A stretch of 64,000 nt of DNA from the IMG/VR virus record IMGVR_UViG_3300021440_000013, positions 124,001 through 188,000 of that record; one strand, given 5' to 3'. Made by a program: the position numbers and the translations under genes. Positions 2,023-47,089 of the stretch are shown in pieces (position 1 is the stretch's first letter; each line of letters opens with the position of its first letter). The notes under the pieces are model-generated. The model worked only from the letters and a program-made list of their open reading frames with translations. It did not search any database and had not been told where the DNA came from.

Positions 2023-2036
2023 CACTAACACATCCG

Positions 2037-2069
2037 TAGGTAGGTGGGGCTCAAAACCCCACCTACCTA
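2037..2069. terminator. Intergenic 13-bp hairpin (no U-tract)
   Basis: TAGGTAGGTGGGG-ctcaaaa-CCCCACCTACCTA. Confidence 0.55.
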
Positions 2070-2121: not shown

Positions 2122-4434
2122 ATGCCTAAAACCACCATCCACGTCTATACCCATCACCTTGTCGTAAGGGATCCGTCTCAACGAATCCGAGATGCGCTTT
2201 ATGCGCTAGCGAATAAGTACACCCAGTTTTCAATGGAATGGGACCGCTATCTGAGGCAACAGGTCTGGCGTCCCGTAAAGACCTTTGGTGTCTATGTGAA
2301 CCCAGGCGACGAGTTTCGTTTCCATATTGGCCAGCTAGAACCCCTTTTTAGGGAGCTCAAGGGCTTTCACGTAGATCCGAGTGGGTATGACGTCGTCTAT
2401 CATCCTGAGCCCGCGTGTGCCGCTGTAGAGCTTCCTGTAAAGAAAGGTTGGGTACTTCGCCGCGAACAGATCGCTGCTAAAGAATTCATCGTGAACAACA
2501 CGGAACCCGGCCATAATCACCCGATCCTGATGATCCGCACCGGGGGTGGTAAAGCACAGCCGCTCGATGCGCTCATTAAAATACCCGGCGGCTGGACGAC
2601 GATGCGTGACATTCAACCCGGTACCGTGATCACCGCGTGGGACGGCACCCCTACTAAAGTCAATGGCGTGTTCCCCCAGGGTAACACACGTGTCTATAAA
2701 GTCAAGTTTGAAGATACGCGAGAAACCAAGAGCGATGAGCAACATCTTTGGAAGATCTATAGATCCGCGACGACTCAGGATTTTGAGGTCCTTGAGACCT
2801 ACAAAATCCTTGAACTCTTAAAAAGCGGCGAAGTCTATACGGACTTACCTCAGAGCGAAAAGGGCGGTGATGTAGAACTCACGATGGATCCGTTCGAATA
2901 CGGAAAACATCTTGCAGAGACACTTAACCAAGCCACATACTACGAGATCAAACCTTATCTAAACGCCTCACATCGTCAAAGGGTAAGTTTCTTGCGTGGT
3001 CTTATTCATAAAGGCAGCGTTTCACATCAGGACGGCGTAATCTACAAAGACATCAAGGAGGTTCGTCTTTTTAATATCGTTCGGTTAGTGGTGCGTTCAC
3101 TAGGCGGTAAGACAACCAGTGTGGAGATGGACGGGTTTTATTACACCGGCATCATCCTACCTAAGCCCTTCGAGGTGTTTTCCTTCCTACCACCAAAAAC
3201 CTACAGGCTGCGCTTAAAGTTAACGAAACTTGAATACGCAGGGATCGAACAGACGCAGTGTATCGCGATTGATCACCCGAGTCATCTTTATGTCACGGAT
3301 CAATTCATCGTCACGCACAACACCGTCACGGCGCTTGTAACGGCGTCCGAACTCGGTAAGCGCCTTGCGATCGTGGTCTTGGCGATGTATATCGACAAAT
3401 GGGTCGGTGACTTGAAAAACGTCTACGACATCGATGACTCTGAGATCGGGATCATCAAGGGCGGAAACATCCTTCAGCGCACCACCCTTTACCCAAACTC
3501 AGGTAAACAGATCCCCAAGGTGTTTGTGATTTCGATCCCAACGCTTAATGCGTGGTATCGGATCTATGAGGACGATCCAACGAACCCCATACTTGACGCG
3601 TATGAGTGTAAGCCCTATGAGCTCTTTGAACATCTAGGGATCGGTACGGTGATCTTTGACGAAGTTCACCAACACCCTCACCCCGTCTTCAAAGTCTACA
3701 CCTATCTTAATGTCCAAAAGACCATCAATCTTTCAGCCACACTGCTAACGAAGGAGCCAACACTTCGAAAAGTTCAGTCGATGATGTTTCCTTATTCGAT
3801 GCGTTTTGACAAAGTCGAAGCCCCGCAGTACATTGAATGTCAGGCGTGTTCATACCAGATCCACGGCTTTAACCACAGCGGGATTCAGTTCATGATGAAA
3901 GCTCGCCAGAGCTATTCGCATGTCGAGTTTGAAAAGAGCATCCTCAAGCACAAAAAGCTCAGACCGCAGTATCTTGAGATGATCCTCTCGCTTTTTGAAG
4001 AAGCTTATCTTGATGATTATCTACGCGGTGATAAAGCCCTCATCTTTGTCTCAACGATCAAGATGGCGCGGGTTCTTGAAGACTTGATGAGAAAGAAGTA
4101 CAAGAAATATAAAGTCATGACCTATGTGGAAGGCGAGCCACTTGAAAACGCAACCGAATCAGACATCTGTATTTCAACCATGATCTCGGCAGGCACAGCG
4201 ATCGATATCCCTAAGTTAAGAGTTTCGATCATGACGATCTCGGTCGATAGCCCCATCTCAAACGTACAGGCACTGGGTCGGCTCCGCCAGCTCAATGATC
4301 GTGATACCCGCTTTTATTACTTTTACTGCACCAACATCCCCAAGCAGGTGGATTATCATCGAAACAAACTCGAGCTCTTTAAAGACCGTGTAAAAAGCCA
4401 CAGCGTGCGTTTGTTTAGCACACTGTATGCATAA
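2122..4434 (+). CDS. SF2 (DExH) helicase, intein-containing (phiKZ gp75-like)
   Basis: Walker A RTGGGK|T is split by an intein. Other motifs: IFDEVH, LSATL, AGTAIDIP, QALGRLR. Start taken at ATG 2122 (MPKTT). Confidence 0.9.
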   Translation: MPKTTIHVYTHHLVVRDPSQRIRDALYALANKYTQFSMEWDRYLRQQVWRPVKTFGVYVNPGDEFRFHIGQLEPLFRELKGFHVDPSGYDVVYHPEPACAAVELPVKKGWVLRREQIAAKEFIVNNTEPGHNHPILMIRTGGGKAQPLDALIKIPGGWTTMRDIQPGTVITAWDGTPTKVNGVFPQGNTRVYKVKFEDTRETKSDEQHLWKIYRSATTQDFEVLETYKILELLKSGEVYTDLPQSEKGGDVELTMDPFEYGKHLAETLNQATYYEIKPYLNASHRQRVSFLRGLIHKGSVSHQDGVIYKDIKEVRLFNIVRLVVRSLGGKTTSVEMDGFYYTGIILPKPFEVFSFLPPKTYRLRLKLTKLEYAGIEQTQCIAIDHPSHLYVTDQFIVTHNTVTALVTASELGKRLAIVVLAMYIDKWVGDLKNVYDIDDSEIGIIKGGNILQRTTLYPNSGKQIPKVFVISIPTLNAWYRIYEDDPTNPILDAYECKPYELFEHLGIGTVIFDEVHQHPHPVFKVYTYLNVQKTINLSATLLTKEPTLRKVQSMMFPYSMRFDKVEAPQYIECQACSYQIHGFNHSGIQFMMKARQSYSHVEFEKSILKHKKLRPQYLEMILSLFEEAYLDDYLRGDKALIFVSTIKMARVLEDLMRKKYKKYKVMTYVEGEPLENATESDICISTMISAGTAIDIPKLRVSIMTISVDSPISNVQALGRLRQLNDRDTRFYYFYCTNIPKQVDYHRNKLELFKDRVKSHSVRLFSTLYA
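2554..3321 (+). mobile_element. Class 3 (WCT-motif) intein, 256 aa, with degenerate LAGLIDADG endonuclease remnant
   Basis: Begins AQPLDALIKIPGGW and ends HLYVTDQFIVTHN|T. Block B SDEQHLW, block F QTQCIAID. Removal restores GGGKT. Confidence 0.9.
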
Positions 4435-4442
4435 GCCCATTA

Positions 4443-4481
4443 AGAGGAGAGGGTTAAACCCTCTCCTCTATTTTTCTTTTT
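4443..4481 (+). terminator. Rho-independent terminator
   Basis: AGAGGAGAGGGT-taa-ACCCTCTCCTCT followed by T-rich tract. Confidence 0.8.
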
Positions 4482-39427: not shown

Positions 39428-42400
39428 TTACATCGTTCTTCGCATATCAAGGGCGGATGAGCCAGACTTATCCTTGCGACCCAGGTTGATTCTGTCCTGT
39501 TCTTTCGGAGAAGCTTTTTCATCGCCTGCTTTAGCAGCCTTAGTGGTGGCACTTACAACCGTAGCCATCATCTCAGCCACCTTTTCAACCTTGACATTAC
39601 TCAGGATCTCACGCAGCACTACCAACGATTCTTGTTGGATACCAACAGATTTGTCTAGCGCTGTACTTAATGACCCAAATCCAGCGGCCATGCCTTCGCC
39701 CGACTCAGTGCGTCCGGTGCTAACGACCCCCGGTGTGCGGTTGTCTAAGAAAAGCCCAGAGCTAGAACTCTTAGGTTCTGGCGCCTTCTTTTGCCCCGCT
39801 GCGGGTCCGGCATTAGCAACCGCTGCTTTTTGAGCCGATACCTTTTCACCTGCCATCGGTGTACTGATCGGACTCTGAGCTGGATCGATATCAAGACCAG
39901 GTCCTTTACTTGGCGCCGCGGAGAGACCTAGCGAGCCAGTGGGTGCTTTGACACCGTAGCGGCTTGATTTCTCATTAAGCTTGGCGCTTAAGTTATCGTA
40001 GACCTGTTTAACGGTGAGGGGTTTACCATCTTTGTAAAAGATGTTTTGATTCTTCGAGGCCGGGCCTGGAAAACGATTCGCTGCAATCGCGTCAGGCGGC
40101 ATGGAAAGAAATGCTTTTGCGCCACTGGCCCCTAAGAAATGCGCCAGGTAAAGGTCAGTCAAATTTGGATTTGACTTGACCGGTGCGATGACTTTCTTAT
40201 TCTCCTTAATGTATTCAGCGGCCATCAAACTTGACGCTTCAACACTAAACGGAGACGCCGTCTTCTCTAAGCCATACTTAGAAGAATACTTAGAAACCAT
40301 CGAATCCCAGGTTGACCGAATGAACTGAAAGAGTCCCGCGGCGGAGCTTGTTGAAGCTTTGGCTTGGGGATTCATGTCTGATTCAACCGCAGCAAACGCC
40401 TGCATGAGAGCCGGGTCCTCACCTGCACGTTTGGCGTGCGATGCGATCTGGGCTTTGATGTCGCCACTTGCGCCATTTTCAGCGCTGGCGGTAGTTGCTT
40501 TCCCGCCGGTGGAGGCGGGTTTCTCTTCAGCGTCAGGTGGAGGAAGATCGTTGGTCGTTGAGTTAGCGGCAGCGGTATTTTGCGCCATTGACAGTTTAGC
40601 ATCTTTGGAAGGAGGCGTTCCTGCTTTGGCGTTTTGATCCGAGGCTTTCTTAACCGCAACGGCAGTATCGACCGTGTTGGTCGAAGTCGTTTCAGCTTTT
40701 ACCGCTTCGCTAAATTTAGGCGGAGGGAGCACCTGATCTTTTGCGGTTTGCTGTAGATTAGACGCTACGGGCGAGGGCGGGGCATTGAGTAGACCCAGTG
40801 CAACGTCTTTGTTACGCCGACCCTTTGCGCTGTTAGCCATGCTACCGTATCCGGCGCCACCACGCATGACACCCGCGCTGATCATGGCGTCTCGCAACTG
40901 ACCATTAGTTTTCGCTTCCGAAGGGTTCTTTTGGATCCCTGCGGGCTCTACGTGCCAAGGTTCTTGCCCCACGGGTCTGGTGAAACCATACTTCTTCATC
41001 AAGCCCAGTTTGTCAAGCTCGTCAGCGATCTTTGAATCGATGTCGAGCGCTAAACCAAACTCATGAAGCGAGTTGCCTGGCGCCGCAGCTCTATCGCCAT
41101 ACTTACGCTTCATCTCGACTTGTTCTTCGTAGGTGCGTACACCCGAAGTGACAAGGATGCTCTTGCCTGTATTCTTTCCATACTCCTCAGCCATCCCTAA
41201 GAAGAGCTTGAGCATGGTTGGATTAAGGCTATCGATGTTGATACCCTTTTTCTCAAACTTAACGAACTGGCGACCTGCTGTACCCTCCAAGGGTGCGCCT
41301 GGCGCCATCGCGACTTTACCCGCTCCGCCTACAAGACTCTTTTCTTCACTGCCTTGCTCGCGCGCTGTGGTGCTGGCTGGTGCCGCACCACCATCTTCAC
41401 TCTGGGTGGCCGTCTGTACCTGGGCTTTATTCTGCTCAGCGTTCTTACGGCGCTCCTCTTCGACCTTCGCTTTTTGAGCTTGGTCGATCTGACTCTCTTT
41501 TTCTTTGTCTTTAAAGACGCCGAAGGTGAGTTTGTCAAAGAGCGTTTTAGCAACCGATGTCGCGGTTGTTTCACCGAGCTTTGCAGGAGGCAGCGTTGCT
41601 TTGGTGTCTTTCGGTTTATCCGCTTTCGCCTTAGCGATCAACGCTTCGATGCTGTCCTTGACAAACTTGTTGTCCAAAGAGAGCTGGCTTAATGCTTTAA
41701 CCGGAGAGGTGTCTTCATCATAGGGGCCACTTTCAAAACCAACGAGTTCGAGATACTTGATCCGATCGTCCGGTTTAAACTTAGCCACCTCTTTGAGCTT
41801 GGCTTTGTTATTGACCGCATAGAGCGCGGTCATGTGTGTCAAGAAGAATGGCTTAAAGCGTTTATCGAACCAACGGCTAAACTTCTCGCCTTGCTCAGTA
41901 TCTTCCTTGTCAATCTTAAAGAGCTCAAGGAGTTCTTCAGATTTGACTTTCTTATCATTGATATAGGCTTTACCGTTATCGTAACCGACACGCCCATCTT
42001 CAAGATACGCTTCCAACATGAACGGGTAGTAGTTATACTGATCCACGCTCTGATTGTAACCAAAGCCATATTGGTTTAAGCGGATGCGTTCAAACTCATC
42101 CGCGTTGTTACGCGTCGCGTATTGGTAGAGTTTATAAAGTCCATAGCCGGCACCTGCTATCGCTGCCGCACCTAAAATCACTGGGCTGCTGATCACGGAA
42201 GCAACGGCCCCTATTGCACCACCGGCTACGTTTAACGCACCCATGGCAAGGCCAGGTAGGGCGCGTGTCAACGCAAAGCGCCCTAGTCCTAATGCACCCT
42301 TGCCGGCAAGCTTAGCGGCACCCCACGCGCCTTTACCAGCAAGCTTGGCTACGCCTCCCACTCCCTTAACCAGTGCACCTGGCGTCATCGCGAGAAGTTT

Positions 42401-45400
42401 ACCCGCTAAACCCATCACGCCGCCAAGACCTTTAGTGATCAAGGAGAAGAGTCCACCAAAGCCCGTCATCGCCATTTTGAGGCCATTTCCAAGCAAATCC
42501 ATCAGTCCTGTACCGCCCTTATAGCGTGCGGTCAGATCTGCTTGAGCGCCTTCTTTTTGGCGAGATGCTTTGAGTTCAGCTAACTTTTCTTCACGCTCTT
42601 CAATACTTCCGTCACGTGTACCACTTCCATCGGTGTCGTTCCAAGCACGCTTGGCCGAATCGATCTTTTGCTTAACACGTTTAAGAAGAGAAGGTTTCTT
42701 TTCAACTTGAGGTTGATTTTCGGGTGTGGCTGCCGCAGCACCTTTTTCTCCACCCTTTAAAAACCCGCCAATACTACTTGCAAGTCCACCCGCCATAGCG
42801 GCACCGGTCCCTAATAGACCGCGTGCCTTACCCTGCGCTAACTTAAAGCGACTTGGTTTGGCAGGACCCATCTGGTCTGGAAGTCTAGGCCCCACGAAAT
42901 CACCTGGACTCTGAGCCTTAGGGGTCGACCAACTCGGTTGCTTGAATCGATCCTTGGCAGCTTGAATCATCGCATCGATACGGTCCTGATACGTCTCGTT
43001 GGGTTGTAAGTCCGATATCCCTCTGTCAATCGCATCTTTTTGTCGAGCACCGGGATATATCGGTCCAACAAACTCATCTGGTCTCTGGGTCTTGGTAGCG
43101 GTGTGTTTTGTTTTTAGCGCGCTGTACTGGTATTTGGCTTTATTGAACAAGCCTTTCTTTTTGTCACCCGGCTGCATCGGACCCACAAAGTCTTCCGGTG
43201 TTCTACCCAAAAGCTTGTCTCCGAGTTCGCGTCCCTTGCCTTTTAGGTCAGTGAAGTTTTCTTTATTCTTAAAGAAATCCATTCCACGAGAGAGAAGTGA
43301 GCCTGAGCTTGTTCCGATTGCAGCAGTGCTGACTCCAGGCTGCATCGGACCCACAAAGTCCTTTGCGACCTCTTCACTGACAGCACCACCTTTACCAAAA
43401 CCAAAGAAACCCTTGATCTTGTTCTTGAGCTCTGCGGTCTTTTCTTTGATCTCAGCCGACTTGATGGCTACTTCGTCCTTAGCTTCCTTTAAAACCTCGT
43501 TCAGGTTCTTAGGCGCTTTGTCGACAGGACCGCCAGGCGGCGTTACCTTGAGCTTGGCAGATTCACGCTTCTTAATGCGTTTTAACACATTCACACGCTG
43601 GTTAAGCATGATGTCGCGGATATCGAGCAAGACCTCGTAAGTATCCTTGGCGTATTTATTTTCACCAAAGTTGATACCAAACTGACCCCAGTCGGTGGGT
43701 TGATCCCACCACTCTTTGATCTTTCCACCCATTGAGAGCGACTTATCGGTCAGGACATTAAATCCTTTTCTAGCTTTATCTCCTACCCACGCAGCCGCCT
43801 TGGTCGCTAGACGGATGACGTTGGTGACGTTTCCACGGATCTTATCACCATAGCGATCATAGAGACCCTTGGAGCGTTCTTCAAGACTCAGGATGATGTT
43901 ACCCACCGAGTCAACGATATCGCCCTTAGCCTTATTGAGCTTATCCATCGTGTCAAGCACTTCGCCCGTGACCGCGTCACGATAAAAACCCGCCTTGAGT
44001 TTAACGGCACGAATAACGGGTTCTACGCCATCAGGCAAGTACAGGTCTTTGGCTTCATTAAGCTTATCCCCAACCCAACCAAAGACTTTACTCACCTTGT
44101 CTTTGATGAACTTTAAACCATTGGGAAGTCCTTCGGTTAGAAAAGACTTCGCGCTATCGAAGACGGTGCTTGAAAAAGATGCTGCTTTTTCATAGAGCGT
44201 GCTAAACGCTTTACGCGTACCGCTCTCTTTATCGGTGAGTTGGTCTTTAAGAAAGTCTTTTGCTGAGGTGAAAAGACCCTTGGCTTTCTCGGTTTTCTCA
44301 CCCGGTGTAAAGAATTCTTTAAGCGCCTCGATTGTGCTTGAACCGGCTTTAAATCCTAGGTCCATCGTGCCGCGCATGATCGAAGTAATCATGCCGCGGA
44401 AAGTGCCATCGTGAACAAGTTGGTTTGGAATAAAGCCACCCGCACCCTGGCCACCGCTTTGCACAAGCTCACTGGCCAGCTTTTGCTGTTCGGTAAGCAG
44501 CTTTACCGTGTCAGCGGTATCTTTTTGGATCTTAGCGAGGAGCTCGTTGGTGAGCTCCTCTGCGCTCTTACCCTTGGTACGGTGACGTGAAGAGCTCTTG
44601 GGTGTGGTTTCCGGCGGTGCGGCGTCACGTTTAAAAAGACCTTCGACCTTCTCACCCAAATGTTGAATGGAAGCCATCAAGGCGCCATTCATACTTTGCA
44701 GATCGATCATCTTGCCCTTTGGTGCAACCTCTTCACCTAGGTTCTTACGCACCTCCTGAGCCATGGGTCCTGAGTGCTCTTGATCATCGCCCTTACCCGC
44801 CTGATAGTTCCAGTTAAAGAGCTTGGTCTTTTTAATACCTTCGTAGGCTTCCCTTGGATTAAAACGCTTAACCTTGTCAAAGAAACCCTCTTCTTTGTCG
44901 GGTTTAGACTTCTGTCCAAAGTAGCGTGCCGCCAAGTCTTTATAATCCTGACTCCCAGGCGCACCCTTAAAGCGATCACTGACCGCCTGGAGGAGTTCTT
45001 TTGGGTTAAGCTCTTTGATCGCTTCTTTAACGTTGATGTCCGAACGAATAAAGGCGCTGTCTTCCATGAACTTGGCGTAAGCTTCTTCATCGATGTCGTA
45101 CTTGCCGTCATCACGCTTTTTCGCTAAACCTTTCTTAGCGATTAGATCGCCATAGCCCGCCTTTTCAAACCCAGCGATGGTTTTATCAGACGAAGGTGTC
45201 CTCTTACGGATGTCCTTGATGGCTTTAGTCAGTGTGTTAGCATCGCGGTTTTTAGTATCGCTTTGCTCGCTTGAGCGAAGCTTATATTCAATTAAGTCTT
45301 GGAGTTCATCTGAGAGCTGTCCGAACGAAGGGGACGAGAGGATCGAATCAGGATCAAGTGGGTTATTACTATCCCGACTCAGCCTTGATAAGAATCGTTT

Positions 45401-47038
45401 AAGCTCGATGATTTGGTCTTCGTCGAGGTTTTCATTTTCGGTAAAGAGTTCGACGGCTTTTTCGACTATGTAGTTATAGCCGGATCTCTGGATATGGGAG
45501 GCAAGGTCTTTTTCAACCCGCGCCCCCATGTCCGTTTCACTGGTGAATTCCTTACGCTTAAAATCGTATACCTGCCGGTCGGCTTGATTTCGCCCGGTTC
45601 TTAACATGACGATTTCGCGGTGAATGTTCGCCAGGTGCCCAGGGATAATGTCGGTTAGACTGATGTGTGCTTTGGCATCAAAACCCATCGTAGGGTTATC
45701 GAGCTCATCGAGATTCGTCTCAGAACCAATACTTCGACCCGGATCCCTGTCCGTGAAGTTATCCATGAGCATGTCAAGGGCACGGAAGAACTTACCCTTA
45801 GCACCAACCTCGTTGGTTTTGTCAACCCAGTTTTGAGACTGCCTTAGTTTCTCGATAGCGCCTGCTGGGTTGTTAGCAATATTGGCAAGGCCGGCAAACT
45901 TCTCCTGGATGACCGAGTCATCACCACCGATCTGTTTGATCCGTTTAGCCATCACGTCGCGAAACCATTCCGCGATGTTGGCACCCGCCGTTGCGCCAAG
46001 CATCTCGGCTTTTGACATGGGTTCCATACCCATGTCAACCATCGATGCGTTCATTCCATCCAGCATCTCTTTAGCGTCAATGGCGCTGTCAAGCTGCATG
46101 TCGGCCGTATCGAGCGCCGAAGTAAAGCCAGAAACTGTCTGACGCGCAGTTTCTTTAAGGCGGTCCATACCTTTTTTCAGGAAGGACTTATCGCCATAGA
46201 GCGACTCAATAAACTTTTTCTTACTGACTTCTTTAAAGCGCTCGCTTTCGGTGATCTTTACGTACTCTGGCATCGCGGTGTTTTTAACCACCGCTTCCAG
46301 TTGCGTTTGGAAAACTTTGAAACTGGCCTGAGCTTTTGAGAAGTGTTCTTTTTGTGCAAGCAGCGAACGAATCTGAAGTTCAAGCGACTTGCGTTGAAAG
46401 CGCTGGTTGGTGTTAACCGTATATTGCGTCTGAATGGAGAGGCTACGCTCCATCGAGCGTTGCAGATCGAAGTTGGCATTAAAGCGCTTAGCACCGATGC
46501 GGTCTCGAATCAGGTCTTTGGCGTTATCGAGCTTACCTTGTTCTTGCTGCTGCTCAAAGACCCCTGCAAGCGACATCGCTACCGCTTGTTCTTCTTGGTT
46601 AGGGACTGTGTTCTGCTCACCACCGATGTCTATGCCACCCCAGCGTGCGATTTTCTCAGTCAGGCTTTTAAGGCGCTTAGCACTCTCTGGAACAAGCTGG
46701 TTAATCTTGGCGGTAACACGCCCGACACGGGGCTTTATTTCTCTTACCGTCTCATCGTATAGTTCGTACATCCCGGTGGTGAGCTCACCGGTTGCATCTG
46801 CCACTTCCCCGTAGCTATCAGGGAGCGTTTTGCGAAGGGTGTCCTTTACAAACTCTGGGCTAACCACCGCGTCTTTAACGCCAGACACGGTACCCATAAA
46901 GACGTTGCCAATGACACCACGCGCTTTTTTCTTACCCGTGGCTTCCTGATTAAGCTCGCCATCAATTTCATTCTCGAAGTCGAAATTAAAATCTGTATCA
47001 AACTCCGGAATATCCGAAACCAGCTCCTTCTTGGCCAT
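39428..47038 (-). CDS. Giant tail-associated peptidoglycan hydrolase / tape-measure-like protein (phiKZ gp181-like) with S74-like, M15-peptidase and SLT domains
   Basis: SLT: AAVES..NP...SSAAGLFQF...W, YLAHFLG. M15: TSGVRT..EQ...APGNSLHEFGLALDI...EPWHVE. S74-like: SDINVKE...GPMAQEV. SD GGAGG then ATG 47038. Confidence 0.85.
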   Translation of the reverse strand: MAKKELVSDIPEFDTDFNFDFENEIDGELNQEATGKKKARGVIGNVFMGTVSGVKDAVVSPEFVKDTLRKTLPDSYGEVADATGELTTGMYELYDETVREIKPRVGRVTAKINQLVPESAKRLKSLTEKIARWGGIDIGGEQNTVPNQEEQAVAMSLAGVFEQQQEQGKLDNAKDLIRDRIGAKRFNANFDLQRSMERSLSIQTQYTVNTNQRFQRKSLELQIRSLLAQKEHFSKAQASFKVFQTQLEAVVKNTAMPEYVKITESERFKEVSKKKFIESLYGDKSFLKKGMDRLKETARQTVSGFTSALDTADMQLDSAIDAKEMLDGMNASMVDMGMEPMSKAEMLGATAGANIAEWFRDVMAKRIKQIGGDDSVIQEKFAGLANIANNPAGAIEKLRQSQNWVDKTNEVGAKGKFFRALDMLMDNFTDRDPGRSIGSETNLDELDNPTMGFDAKAHISLTDIIPGHLANIHREIVMLRTGRNQADRQVYDFKRKEFTSETDMGARVEKDLASHIQRSGYNYIVEKAVELFTENENLDEDQIIELKRFLSRLSRDSNNPLDPDSILSSPSFGQLSDELQDLIEYKLRSSEQSDTKNRDANTLTKAIKDIRKRTPSSDKTIAGFEKAGYGDLIAKKGLAKKRDDGKYDIDEEAYAKFMEDSAFIRSDINVKEAIKELNPKELLQAVSDRFKGAPGSQDYKDLAARYFGQKSKPDKEEGFFDKVKRFNPREAYEGIKKTKLFNWNYQAGKGDDQEHSGPMAQEVRKNLGEEVAPKGKMIDLQSMNGALMASIQHLGEKVEGLFKRDAAPPETTPKSSSRHRTKGKSAEELTNELLAKIQKDTADTVKLLTEQQKLASELVQSGGQGAGGFIPNQLVHDGTFRGMITSIMRGTMDLGFKAGSSTIEALKEFFTPGEKTEKAKGLFTSAKDFLKDQLTDKESGTRKAFSTLYEKAASFSSTVFDSAKSFLTEGLPNGLKFIKDKVSKVFGWVGDKLNEAKDLYLPDGVEPVIRAVKLKAGFYRDAVTGEVLDTMDKLNKAKGDIVDSVGNIILSLEERSKGLYDRYGDKIRGNVTNVIRLATKAAAWVGDKARKGFNVLTDKSLSMGGKIKEWWDQPTDWGQFGINFGENKYAKDTYEVLLDIRDIMLNQRVNVLKRIKKRESAKLKVTPPGGPVDKAPKNLNEVLKEAKDEVAIKSAEIKEKTAELKNKIKGFFGFGKGGAVSEEVAKDFVGPMQPGVSTAAIGTSSGSLLSRGMDFFKNKENFTDLKGKGRELGDKLLGRTPEDFVGPMQPGDKKKGLFNKAKYQYSALKTKHTATKTQRPDEFVGPIYPGARQKDAIDRGISDLQPNETYQDRIDAMIQAAKDRFKQPSWSTPKAQSPGDFVGPRLPDQMGPAKPSRFKLAQGKARGLLGTGAAMAGGLASSIGGFLKGGEKGAAAATPENQPQVEKKPSLLKRVKQKIDSAKRAWNDTDGSGTRDGSIEEREEKLAELKASRQKEGAQADLTARYKGGTGLMDLLGNGLKMAMTGFGGLFSLITKGLGGVMGLAGKLLAMTPGALVKGVGGVAKLAGKGAWGAAKLAGKGALGLGRFALTRALPGLAMGALNVAGGAIGAVASVISSPVILGAAAIAGAGYGLYKLYQYATRNNADEFERIRLNQYGFGYNQSVDQYNYYPFMLEAYLEDGRVGYDNGKAYINDKKVKSEELLELFKIDKEDTEQGEKFSRWFDKRFKPFFLTHMTALYAVNNKAKLKEVAKFKPDDRIKYLELVGFESGPYDEDTSPVKALSQLSLDNKFVKDSIEALIAKAKADKPKDTKATLPPAKLGETTATSVAKTLFDKLTFGVFKDKEKESQIDQAQKAKVEEERRKNAEQNKAQVQTATQSEDGGAAPASTTAREQGSEEKSLVGGAGKVAMAPGAPLEGTAGRQFVKFEKKGINIDSLNPTMLKLFLGMAEEYGKNTGKSILVTSGVRTYEEQVEMKRKYGDRAAAPGNSLHEFGLALDIDSKIADELDKLGLMKKYGFTRPVGQEPWHVEPAGIQKNPSEAKTNGQLRDAMISAGVMRGGAGYGSMANSAKGRRNKDVALGLLNAPPSPVASNLQQTAKDQVLPPPKFSEAVKAETTSTNTVDTAVAVKKASDQNAKAGTPPSKDAKLSMAQNTAAANSTTNDLPPPDAEEKPASTGGKATTASAENGASGDIKAQIASHAKRAGEDPALMQAFAAVESDMNPQAKASTSSAAGLFQFIRSTWDSMVSKYSSKYGLEKTASPFSVEASSLMAAEYIKENKKVIAPVKSNPNLTDLYLAHFLGASGAKAFLSMPPDAIAANRFPGPASKNQNIFYKDGKPLTVKQVYDNLSAKLNEKSSRYGVKAPTGSLGLSAAPSKGPGLDIDPAQSPISTPMAGEKVSAQKAAVANAGPAAGQKKAPEPKSSSSGLFLDNRTPGVVSTGRTESGEGMAAGFGSLSTALDKSVGIQQESLVVLREILSNVKVEKVAEMMATVVSATTKAAKAGDEKASPKEQDRINLGRKDKSGSSALDMRRTM

Positions 47039-47089
47039 TTTTAGATAGCCTCCCATAATGTAAAGTTTAGCATCCAAAGGATCTTCGCT

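What the first reader, a model, noticed from the sequence alone, without database searches (positions are those of the whole stretch)
2554..3321. Non-canonical Ala-start class 3 intein in the helicase P-loop
Seen: the insertion lies between K and T of GGGKT. It starts with Ala rather than Cys/Ser and has Trp in block B (HLW), Cys in block F (QCI), Thr in block G (VTHN) and a +1 Thr. Established: this WCT triplet defines class 3 inteins, which splice through a block-F Cys branched intermediate. The central region keeps only eroded LAGLIDADG motifs (DPFEYGKHLAE; RVSFLRGLIHKGS; RSLGG) without the catalytic acidic residues. Inference: the intein splices but cannot home, and could act as a redox- or stress-sensitive switch on helicase activity.
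Basis: partly seen in the sequence, partly recalled or inferred. Interest (0 to 1): 0.6.

Follow-up and report, generated by a model that had tools for sequence, protein, structure and literature searches.

The report
Class 3 intein in phage helicase
A jumbo phage's helicase gene is interrupted inside its ATP-binding loop by a self-splicing protein element of the known "class 3" kind whose homing nuclease has decayed; it is a real but ordinary member of a large, so far little-described phage intein family.

Summary
Window 2554-3321 encodes a 256-aa intein between Lys and Thr of the Walker A motif (TGGGK|T) of an SF2 helicase (2122-4434) in a phiKZ/EL-like jumbo phage. It carries every class 3 sequence signature: Ala1, DxxH-L-W in block B, Cys at F:4, Thr-His-Asn in block G, and Thr+1. 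Its closest solved relative is the class 3 M. smegmatis DnaB-1 intein, which sits at the same P-loop position. In 118 homologous inteins, residue 1 varies freely while His, Trp, Cys, Thr, His and Asn are invariant. At least 64 intein-less orthologues read GK|T without a break.

Alignment with relatives that keep an intact LAGLIDADG nuclease shows that this copy has lost about 70 residues (the first half-domain) and the second catalytic Asp. "Splices but cannot home" is therefore well supported by comparison, though not by experiment.

The redox/stress-switch idea is not supported. This is the only one of the 118 inteins with a single Cys, so the intra-intein disulfide trap known from DnaB-1 cannot form.

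Verdict: a new member of a known kind. As a side result, the family shows a very active gain/decay/loss cycle across jumbo-phage helicases.

The parts
2122..4434 (+). Helicase precursor gene (770 codons plus stop): an SF2 helicase interrupted by the intein. It lies just downstream of an RNA polymerase beta-subunit gene, as in Pseudomonas phage EL.
   Evidence: ORF and translation. phrog_16 'DNA helicase' E 3.5e-32; weak ResIII and Helicase_C hits. An identical 770-aa protein is on record from a 216,876-bp contig. Synteny with EL gp039/gp040.
2122..2553 (+). N-extein (144 aa), ending in the first part of Walker A, ...MIRTGGGK.
   Evidence: It is 87% identical to P0003.
2554..3321 (+). Class 3 intein, 256 aa (Ala1 to Asn256).
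2554..2595 (+). Block A region (residues 1-14). Residue 1 is Ala and is not a nucleophile.
   Evidence: It aligns with residues 3-16 of 6bs8. Position 1 across 118 homologues: A54, L22, S15, E8, F6, G5 and others.
2734..2751 (+). Block B core: D61-E-Q-H64-L-W66. This is the DxxH motif, with His at B:10 and Trp at B:12.
   Evidence: H64, L65 and W66 are invariant in 118 of 118. The same DxxH-x-W arrangement occurs in Msm DnaB-1: D62, H65, W67 (PMC6195587).
2761..3228 (+). Central insert (residues 70-225): a decayed LAGLIDADG homing-endonuclease remnant that still folds. It consists of one LAGLIDADG helix plus one alpha/beta half-domain.
   Evidence: Alignment with intact relatives. No Pfam LAGLIDADG hit. 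High pLDDT and secondary structure. Superposes on PI-SceI over 252 residues. It is the fastest-evolving part: 42% identity to P0003 against 87% for the exteins.
2887..2922 (+). Remnant of LAGLIDADG motif 1 (residues 112-123), with Glu122 in the catalytic Asp column. About 70 residues, the first half-domain, are missing directly after it.
2974..3024 (+). Remnant of LAGLIDADG motif 2 (residues 141-157). The catalytic Asp column holds Gly154.
3088..3108 (+). Conserved VRSLGG helix end of the retained half-domain.
   Evidence: R181, S182, G184 and G185 are invariant or nearly so in alignment A1.
3250..3294 (+). Block F, with Cys236 (codon 3259-3261) at F:4. This is the predicted initiating nucleophile and the first branch point.
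   Evidence: C236 and I237 are invariant in 118 of 118. It aligns with Cys118 of Msm DnaB-1.
3304..3324 (+). Block G: F-I-V-T254-H255-N256, followed by Thr+1 (3322-3324).
   Evidence: T, H and N are invariant in 118 of 118. The +1 residue is Thr in all but one homologue, which has Ser.
3322..4431 (+). C-extein (370 aa), starting with the Walker A Thr. It carries the DEVH box and the C-terminal helicase domain.
   Evidence: Intein-less orthologues of 505-540 aa share up to 54% identity.
4443..4469 (+). Terminator-like hairpin (12 pairs) followed by a T-run, just after the helicase stop codon.

Best explanation
The insert is a splicing-competent class 3 intein with a dead homing endonuclease. 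It sits between Lys and Thr of the Walker A motif of a jumbo-phage SF2 helicase.

The precursor (770 aa) cannot form a P-loop. Splicing is expected to run in four steps:
1. The thiol of Cys236 (block F:4), helped by His64, Thr254 and Trp66, attacks the Lys(-1)-Ala1 peptide bond and carries the N-extein as a thioester (the block F branched intermediate).
2. The N-extein is passed to the hydroxyl of Thr+1 (the block G branched intermediate).
3. Asn256 cyclises, helped by His255, and frees the 256-aa intein.
4. An O-to-N shift makes the Lys-Thr bond, giving a 514-aa helicase with an intact TGGGKT loop.

The central LAGLIDADG domain has lost its first half-domain and its second catalytic Asp. The element can therefore no longer cut an empty allele and is inherited vertically. 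It is kept only because imprecise loss would destroy the P-loop. Splicing is most likely constitutive.

Shown here: the sequence signature, the fold, the exact junction, the comparative conservation, and the decay of the nuclease. Inferred: that splicing occurs, the order of the steps, and the absence of nuclease activity.
For: - Boundaries and residues are established.
- Intein-less orthologues are contiguous at GK|T with the same flanks.
- The best solved relatives are class 3 DnaB-1 inteins: E 1.3e-7; Z 20.2, rmsd 1.5 A, 30% identity over 123 of 125 residues.
- Msm DnaB-1 is inserted at the equivalent GVGK|S (PMC5222942).
- Across 118 homologous inteins, His64, Leu65, Trp66, Cys236, Thr254, His255 and Asn256 are invariant, while residue 1 takes at least 10 different residues. 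The closest relative has Asp1.
- Exteins are 87% identical to P0003 with dN about 0.08 and saturated synonymous sites. The helicase is therefore under purifying selection although its P-loop is split, which requires splicing.
- The nuclease has decayed. The same truncated architecture is shared with P0003 and P0004 (256, 256 and 255 aa), and the four-member clade is all degenerate. The non-homing state is therefore old, yet the splicing residues are kept.
- The GC content of the insert matches that of its surroundings.
Against: - There is no biochemical evidence for splicing or for the block F intermediate in this or any member of this jumbo-phage clade.
- Engineering the WCT triplet alone into a class 1 intein does not give splicing (PMC7664689), so the signature is necessary rather than sufficient.
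- Glu122 sits at the first catalytic column, so a residual metal site cannot be excluded from sequence alone.
- dS is saturated, so no proper dN/dS could be obtained.
- Membership of the monophyletic class 3 clade was not tested against the full published intein set.
Confidence: 0.8

Rival explanations
1. The anatomy is the same, but the intein works as a conditional switch. Oxidants, reactive chlorine or zinc reversibly block Cys236. This would hold the helicase inactive until conditions in the infected cell are favourable, as shown for M. smegmatis DnaB-1.
For: The closest characterised relative is reversibly inhibited by H2O2 through its catalytic Cys (PMC6195587). Zinc and chlorine-species papers on the same intein were listed but not read. 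The insertion in the P-loop makes the precursor an obvious off state. Any thiol nucleophile is in principle oxidisable.
Against: The known mechanism needs a second Cys inside the intein (Cys48-Cys118). This intein has one Cys only and is the sole such case among 118 relatives. The column aligned to Cys48 is Val47. The family's common Cys60 is Ser here. The nearest extein Cys residues are 45 residues upstream of the N-terminal junction and 96 residues downstream of the C-terminal junction. Nothing in the comparison suggests selection for a sensor.
Confidence: 0.1
2. The intein is dead. It no longer splices, and the gene is a decaying helicase pseudogene or is complemented by another helicase. 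The precedent is the Arthrobacter Arth_1007 class 3 intein pseudogene.
For: A precedent exists for an inactive class 3-like intein (PMC3196547). The nuclease part has clearly decayed. No experiment shows splicing.
Against: Arth_1007 lacked Cys F:4 and His B:10 and had only 66 extein residues. Here every catalytic residue is intact. The reading frame is open over 770 codons. The exteins are the most conserved part (87% against 42-68% for intein parts; dN 0.08) across a divergence with saturated synonymous sites. The model is confident throughout.
Confidence: 0.04
3. The intein splices by another route: class 2-like direct attack of Thr+1 on the N-terminal junction, or a class 1 route using another start. 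Cys236 would then be only structural.
For: Ala1 is also typical of class 2 inteins. 15 of 118 relatives have Ser1, which could in principle act as a class 1 nucleophile.
Against: According to a 2011 paper, class 2 inteins had been found only in KlbA and lack the WCT triplet (PMC3196547). Here W, C and T are invariant in all 118, including the Ser1 copies. [quoted passage not shown] A hydroxyl attacking an amide directly is chemically the least likely route.
Confidence: 0.03
4. The retained, well-folded half-LAGLIDADG remnant has been put to a new use. Candidates are DNA binding, help in folding or splicing (maturase-like), or homing together with a nuclease supplied in trans.
For: The remnant is predicted to fold with high confidence. 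Its non-synonymous divergence (pN 0.39) is below the saturated synonymous level (pS 0.83), so it is not drifting freely. The VRSLGG element is conserved.
Against: It is the fastest-evolving part of the gene. Relatives have remnants of all sizes down to 216-aa inteins, so no particular remnant is required. Some constraint is expected simply because a misfolding insert would stop the two Hint halves from meeting.
Confidence: 0.03

Closest known systems
Mycobacterium smegmatis DnaB-1 (DnaBi1) class 3 mini-intein (PDB 6bs8), and the M. chimaera DnaB-1 intein (6rix/6riy)
   Same: Ala1, DxxH-x-W in block B, Cys at F:4 and Thr-His-Asn in block G. The insertion is directly after the Walker A Lys of a helicase, with a hydroxyl +1 residue. 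The Hint core superposes at 1.5 A with 30% identity.
   Different: The host protein is an SF2 helicase of a jumbo phage, not a bacterial RecA-fold DnaB. The intein is 256 aa with a folded nuclease remnant, instead of 139 aa with a disordered linker. The +1 residue is Thr rather than Ser. There is no second Cys, so the Cys48-Cys118 redox trap is absent.
Mycobacteriophage class 3 inteins (Bethlehem DnaB, Catera gp206, TerL1-c/-e) and the Deinococcus radiodurans Snf2 intein
   Same: They are class 3 signature inteins with a phage or helicase setting. The literature proposes a phage origin for the class (PMC3196547, PMC5050341). tblastn with this intein hits cluster-C1 mycobacteriophage genes and terminases at E about 1e-6 to 1e-7.
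   Different: Sequence identity is low (22-31%). The hosts and host genes differ. I could not read the two primary papers (PMC3133030, PMC2923505 are not held), so insertion sites were not compared.
Unannotated inteins in helicases of isolated jumbo phages, e.g. Pseudomonas phage EL gp040 ('DNA helicase', 760 aa)
   Same: The gene is the same, as are the neighbourhood (RNAP beta gene upstream), the GK|T site and the signature (Met1, HLW, QCI, VTHN|T). The EL intein is 248 aa with a decayed nuclease.
   Different: Only 33% identity. EL keeps a second Cys. The public records call these genes helicase, DarB-like antirestriction, 'RAD2/SF2 helicase 1 and 2', or DOD homing endonuclease, not intein.
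PI-SceI (VMA1 intein), the model intein with a LAGLIDADG endonuclease
   Same: Overall two-part architecture. It is the best full-length structural match: Z 20.9, 252 residues aligned.
   Different: PI-SceI is a class 1 intein (Cys1) with a complete, active two-domain nuclease and an extra DNA-recognition region. Here half of the nuclease is missing.

Membership tests
Intein (Hint-fold protein-splicing element) | Hint fold with splicing blocks A, B, F and G | tested here: met
   phmmer hits to intein structures. AF2 pLDDT 96.2. Foldseek and VIA place inteins at the top of the list, Z about 20. Pfam intein models nearly miss it: Hom_end_hint E 0.15, and PF14890 finds nothing in the genome.
Intein (Hint-fold protein-splicing element) | In-frame insertion in a conserved host protein, with orthologues lacking it that are contiguous at the junction | tested here: met
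   At least 64 intein-less orthologues. P0086 and P0123 read TGGGK-TVTAL... exactly as the two flanks do here.
Class 3 intein | No Ser/Thr/Cys nucleophile required at residue 1 | tested here: met
   Residue 1 is Ala (GCA, 2554-2556). Across 118 homologues: A, L, S, E, F, G, D, P, M, V.
Class 3 intein | Trp at block B position 12, two residues after His B:10 | tested here: met
   H64-L65-W66, invariant in 118 of 118. Aligns with H65/W67 of 6bs8.
Class 3 intein | Cys at block F position 4 | tested here: met
   C236, invariant in 118 of 118. Aligns with Cys118 of 6bs8.
Class 3 intein | Thr at block G position 5, followed by His-Asn | tested here: met
   T254-H255-N256, invariant in 118 of 118.
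Class 3 intein | Ser or Thr (rarely Cys) at +1 | tested here: met
   Thr+1 (3322-3324). 117 of 118 homologues have Thr and one has Ser. Criterion from PMC5222942.
Class 3 intein | Splicing through a block F Cys branched thioester intermediate; Cys F:4 essential | not testable with these tools
   This needs expression and mutagenesis (C236A, N256A, T+1A) with thiol-lability tests.
Class 3 intein | Belongs to the single (monophyletic) class 3 clade | tested here: inconclusive
   The nearest solved sequences and structures are class 3, ahead of the class 1 gp41-1 intein. No tree was made against the published intein set, which is not on hand.
LAGLIDADG (DOD) homing endonuclease | Two LAGLIDADG helices, each ending in a catalytic Asp/Glu, each followed by an alpha/beta DNA-binding half-domain | tested here: not met
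   No Pfam PF14528/PF05204 hit. About 70 residues are deleted after motif 1, and motif 2 has Gly154 in the Asp column. 50 of 118 relatives keep LGDG...DTDG.
Redox-trapped conditional intein (Msm DnaBi1 type) | A second Cys inside the intein able to bond with the catalytic Cys | tested here: not met
   The intein has a single Cys. It has Val at the Cys48-aligned column and Ser60/Asp61 where relatives often have Cys.
SF2 helicase (host protein) | Walker A GxGK[ST] restored after splicing, DExH box, C-terminal helicase domain | tested here: met
   The flanks give TGGGK + T. A DEVH box is in the C-extein. phrog_16 E 3.5e-32; ResIII and Helicase_C score just under the Pfam cut-offs. The joined extein sequence was not built or searched; the two exteins were searched apart by reference.

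The most novel reading that the evidence does not exclude
The decayed intein is not merely tolerated. It may be kept as a post-translational timer or gate on the phage helicase, responding for example to thiol oxidation, zinc or the compartment in which the precursor folds. The folded half-nuclease remnant would serve as a regulatory or DNA-binding module. More broadly, this clade (at least 118 protein clusters, with intact nucleases in about 40%) may be a main natural reservoir of class 3 inteins, which would fit the proposed phage origin of the class.
Probability: 0.08. Interest if true: 0.55.

Novelty: new member of a known kind. Interest (0 to 1): 0.3.

Why it matters
For this window the finding corrects the gene model. 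The 770-aa "helicase" is a precursor of a 514-aa enzyme plus a 256-aa intein. Pfam's intein models miss the intein, and public phage records label its relatives inconsistently.

More generally, the family offers more than a hundred natural class 3 inteins. They have every residue-1 variant, +1 Thr, and nucleases at all stages of decay, which is useful raw material for understanding and engineering the less-studied class 3 mechanism. This copy is a natural single-Cys version.

The intermixing of intact, decayed and empty alleles among almost identical helicases is a clean natural example of the homing cycle in virulent jumbo phages. None of this changes current concepts.

Tried and rejected
- A near-identical DNA search of the phage collection found nothing, so the phage itself is not among the isolates.
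- Pfam is almost blind to this intein. Hom_end_hint scores E 0.15 and no LAGLIDADG family matches. PF14890 found nothing in the whole 216,876-bp genome, not even this intein. Pfam's silence is therefore not evidence.
- dN/dS between the window and its closest relative (L002) could not be used because synonymous sites are saturated. Only dN and identities per region are reported.
- Composition gave no sign of recent acquisition.
- No second intein of this kind occurs in the genome, and there are no tRNAs in the window.
- The two primary class 3 papers (PMC3133030, PMC2923505) are not held. The criteria were taken from later open papers by the same authors.
- Literature searches for a description of this jumbo-phage helicase intein found none in the held library. 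That is no proof that none exists.
- The joined (spliced) extein sequence was deliberately not assembled or searched. The N- and C-exteins were handled apart by reference.
- Reads tools, the complex predictor and the large representative search were not needed.
Full report
**1. What is there**

The + strand ORF 2083/2122-4434 encodes a 770-aa protein starting at ATG 2122. An identical protein is on record from a 216,876-bp contig. The window is bases 124,001-188,000 of that virus record, which has direct terminal repeats.

Neighbouring genes include three split RNA polymerase beta-type subunits (phrog_3015, 2986, 3148), a virion protein and an SbcC-like nuclease. The nearest isolates by protein are jumbo phages: Xanthomonas LucasX and RTH11, Erwinia Rebecca, Serratia 2050HW and Pseudomonas EL. 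The host genome is therefore a phiKZ/EL-like jumbo phage.

The protein matches phrog_16 'DNA helicase' (E 3.5e-32) over its whole length. It scores just below threshold for ResIII and Helicase_C.

**2. The insert**

The helicase match is broken after ...MIRTGGGK and resumes at TVTALVTA.... The 256 residues between (window 2554-3321) do not match helicase profiles. They match the intein-bearing parts of profiles for unrelated proteins: helicase loader, primase and three terminase families.

Sequence and structure evidence:
- phmmer against all PDB chains ranks the class 3 M. smegmatis DnaB-1 intein first (6bs8, E 1.3e-7), then the M. chimaera DnaB-1 intein. Both ends align: the start of the intein through block B, and block F through the terminal THN.
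- An AlphaFold2 model built on 60 homologues has mean pLDDT 96.2.
- Foldseek puts PI-SceI first (E 1.4e-10, TM 0.71 on the query) and the class 3 DnaB inteins at TM 0.80-0.83 on the target.
- The second-look aligner gives PI-SceI Z 20.9 over 252 residues. It gives 6bs8 Z 20.2, rmsd 1.5 A, over 123 of 125 residues at 30% identity.

**3. Junction**

A search with the C-extein alone, by reference, found 75 relatives, nearly all of 505-540 aa. In 64 of them a contiguous GxGK[ST] is found. P0086 reads ...TGGGKTVTALVTA and P0123 ...TGGGKTVTALAAA, the two flanks of the window joined without a gap. The intein boundaries are thus fixed to the residue: Lys(-1) | Ala1 ... Asn256 | Thr+1. I did not build or search the joined extein sequence; the exteins were treated apart.

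**4. Class**

The published criteria for class 3 are as follows (PMC3196547; PMC5222942; PMC5050341):
- no need for Ser/Thr/Cys at residue 1
- Trp at B:12
- Cys at F:4
- Thr at G:5
- usually Ser or Thr at +1

The window has Ala1, D61-x-x-H64-L-W66, C236, T254-H255-N256 and Thr+1. The DxxH variant of block B is the one described for Msm DnaB-1.

The comparative test is stronger than the single sequence. The word search with the whole protein returned 118 intein-bearing homologues. In their alignment H64, L65, W66, C236, I237, T254, H255 and N256 are invariant. Residue 1 is A (54), L (22), S (15), E (8), F (6), G (5) or D, P, M, V. The nearest relative (75% identical overall) starts with Asp.

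A position that takes acidic, aliphatic, aromatic and Gly/Pro residues cannot be the nucleophile. An invariant Cys at F:4 with invariant Trp and Thr is what the class 3 mechanism predicts. Msm DnaB-1 sits at the equivalent site (…GVGK | S…). The Lys|Thr P-loop position is called the classic intein site.

**5. Does it splice?**

This is not shown; it is inferred. Against the closest relative (L002) the identities per region are:

| Region | Identity |
|---|---|
| Exteins | 87% |
| Two Hint parts | 65-68% |
| Central insert | 42% |

The corresponding dN values are 0.08-0.09, 0.25 and 0.55, with synonymous sites saturated.

A helicase whose Walker A loop is split by 256 residues would not be held under such constraint unless the loop is restored. 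The Arthrobacter class 3-like pseudogene had lost Cys F:4 and His B:10. Nothing of that kind is seen here.

**6. The nuclease**

About half of the relatives have inteins of about 343-356 aa with Pfam LAGLIDADG_3 hits. Aligning them with the window's intein shows three things:
- Motif 1 (…DPYxLGxxLGDG) corresponds to residues 112-123 here, with Glu122 in the Asp column.
- The next ~70 residues, the first alpha/beta half-domain, are absent.
- Motif 2 (…LLQGLLDTDGTV) corresponds to residues 141-157, with Gly154 in the Asp column.

Shorter deletions follow in the last hairpin and linker. The model shows one LAGLIDADG helix packed on a single alpha-beta-beta-alpha-beta-beta unit. Of the 118 inteins, 50 are long with both acidic residues, and about 60 are shortened with degraded motifs.

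The one slip is that an acidic residue does stand at the first catalytic column. It is Thr and Gln in the two nearest relatives, so it is not conserved.

**7. History**

A FastTree tree of C-exteins (182 rows, intein columns excluded by construction) needs at least 34 changes of intein presence/absence, 23 of them forced by well-supported branches. Several sets of almost identical helicases carry a long intein, a decayed one or none:
- P0016 / P0014-15 / P0123
- P0019 / P0018 / P0126
- P0032 / P0035 / P0141-144
- P0083 / P0065
- P0021 / P0137

This is the invasion-decay-loss cycle expected for homing elements, running fast in these phages.

The window's copy lies in a supported clade of four (with P0003, P0004 and P0022) that are all decayed. 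It shares its 255-256-aa architecture with two of them, so here the non-homing state is old.

Caveats: this is a quick tree method, the sampling is by 90% clusters, and recombination within the gene is possible.

**8. The switch idea**

In Msm DnaB-1, H2O2 traps the catalytic Cys118 in a disulfide with Cys48 inside the intein. The window's intein has one Cys only. It is the only one of the 118 with a single Cys; the others have 2-8. The column aligned with Cys48 is Val47. Position 60, Cys in 85 of 118 relatives, is Ser, and position 61, Cys in 36, is Asp. The nearest extein cysteines are 45 residues before and 96 after the junctions.

An intein-internal redox trap is therefore excluded. Only the generic vulnerability of a thiol nucleophile remains. 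I rate a regulatory role at about 0.1.

**9. Known or new**

Class 3 inteins, their link with phages and helicases, the P-loop site and decayed nucleases are all established. The same intein is present, unannotated, in the helicase of Pseudomonas phage EL. EL gp040 has Met1, HLW, QCI and VTHN|T, with the RNAP beta gene upstream as here. It is also present in many other isolated jumbo phages, whose records call the gene by various names. I found no paper in the held library that describes this clade.

Verdict: a real feature, a new member of a known kind, of modest interest. The family-level picture is the more useful by-product.

Noticed in passing
Related proteins P0002-P0194; window gene 2122-4434: Nearly identical jumbo-phage helicases carry an intact-nuclease intein, a decayed intein or no intein at the same GK|T site. 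At least 23 well-supported gains or losses occur on the C-extein tree, which indicates a very active homing cycle in virulent jumbo phages.
   Followed up: partly
Intein residues 60-61 (window 2731-2736) against the alignment of 118 inteins: 85 of 118 relatives have Cys at position 60 and 36 have Cys at 61 (the block B 'T' position of TxxH), next to the active site. The window's copy has Ser and Asp, and is the only single-Cys member. Whether those extra cysteines form a redox or metal site in the relatives is open.
   Followed up: partly
L003 (Pseudomonas phage EL, NC_007623.1, 47888-50170): EL gp040, annotated only as 'DNA helicase', contains a 248-aa class 3-signature intein at the same site. 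Other records split or mislabel the gene ('RAD2/SF2 helicase 1' and '2', 'DarB-like antirestriction', 'DOD-type homing endonuclease', 'terminase large subunit').
   Followed up: partly
window 2036-2069 (+), between the RNAP beta gene stop (2022) and the helicase start (2122): There is a perfect 13-bp G+C-rich inverted repeat with a 7-nt loop and no T-run. It could be an RNA hairpin or processing or regulatory site. It was not picked up by the terminator scan.
   Followed up: no
window 4443-4469 (+): A strong terminator-like hairpin (12 pairs plus a T-run) lies nine bases after the helicase stop codon.
   Followed up: no
window 39428-47077 (-): A very long ORF of 2549 aa lies on the minus strand. 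It was not examined.
   Followed up: no
Stx2a-converting phages and others: The N-terminal Hint part of this intein also matches 'replication protein' regions of 49 Stx2a-converting phage records (about 42% identity over 67 aa). It also matches PhoH, primase-helicase and exonuclease genes of diverse phages. Related inteins are thus spread over many ATPase genes.
   Followed up: no
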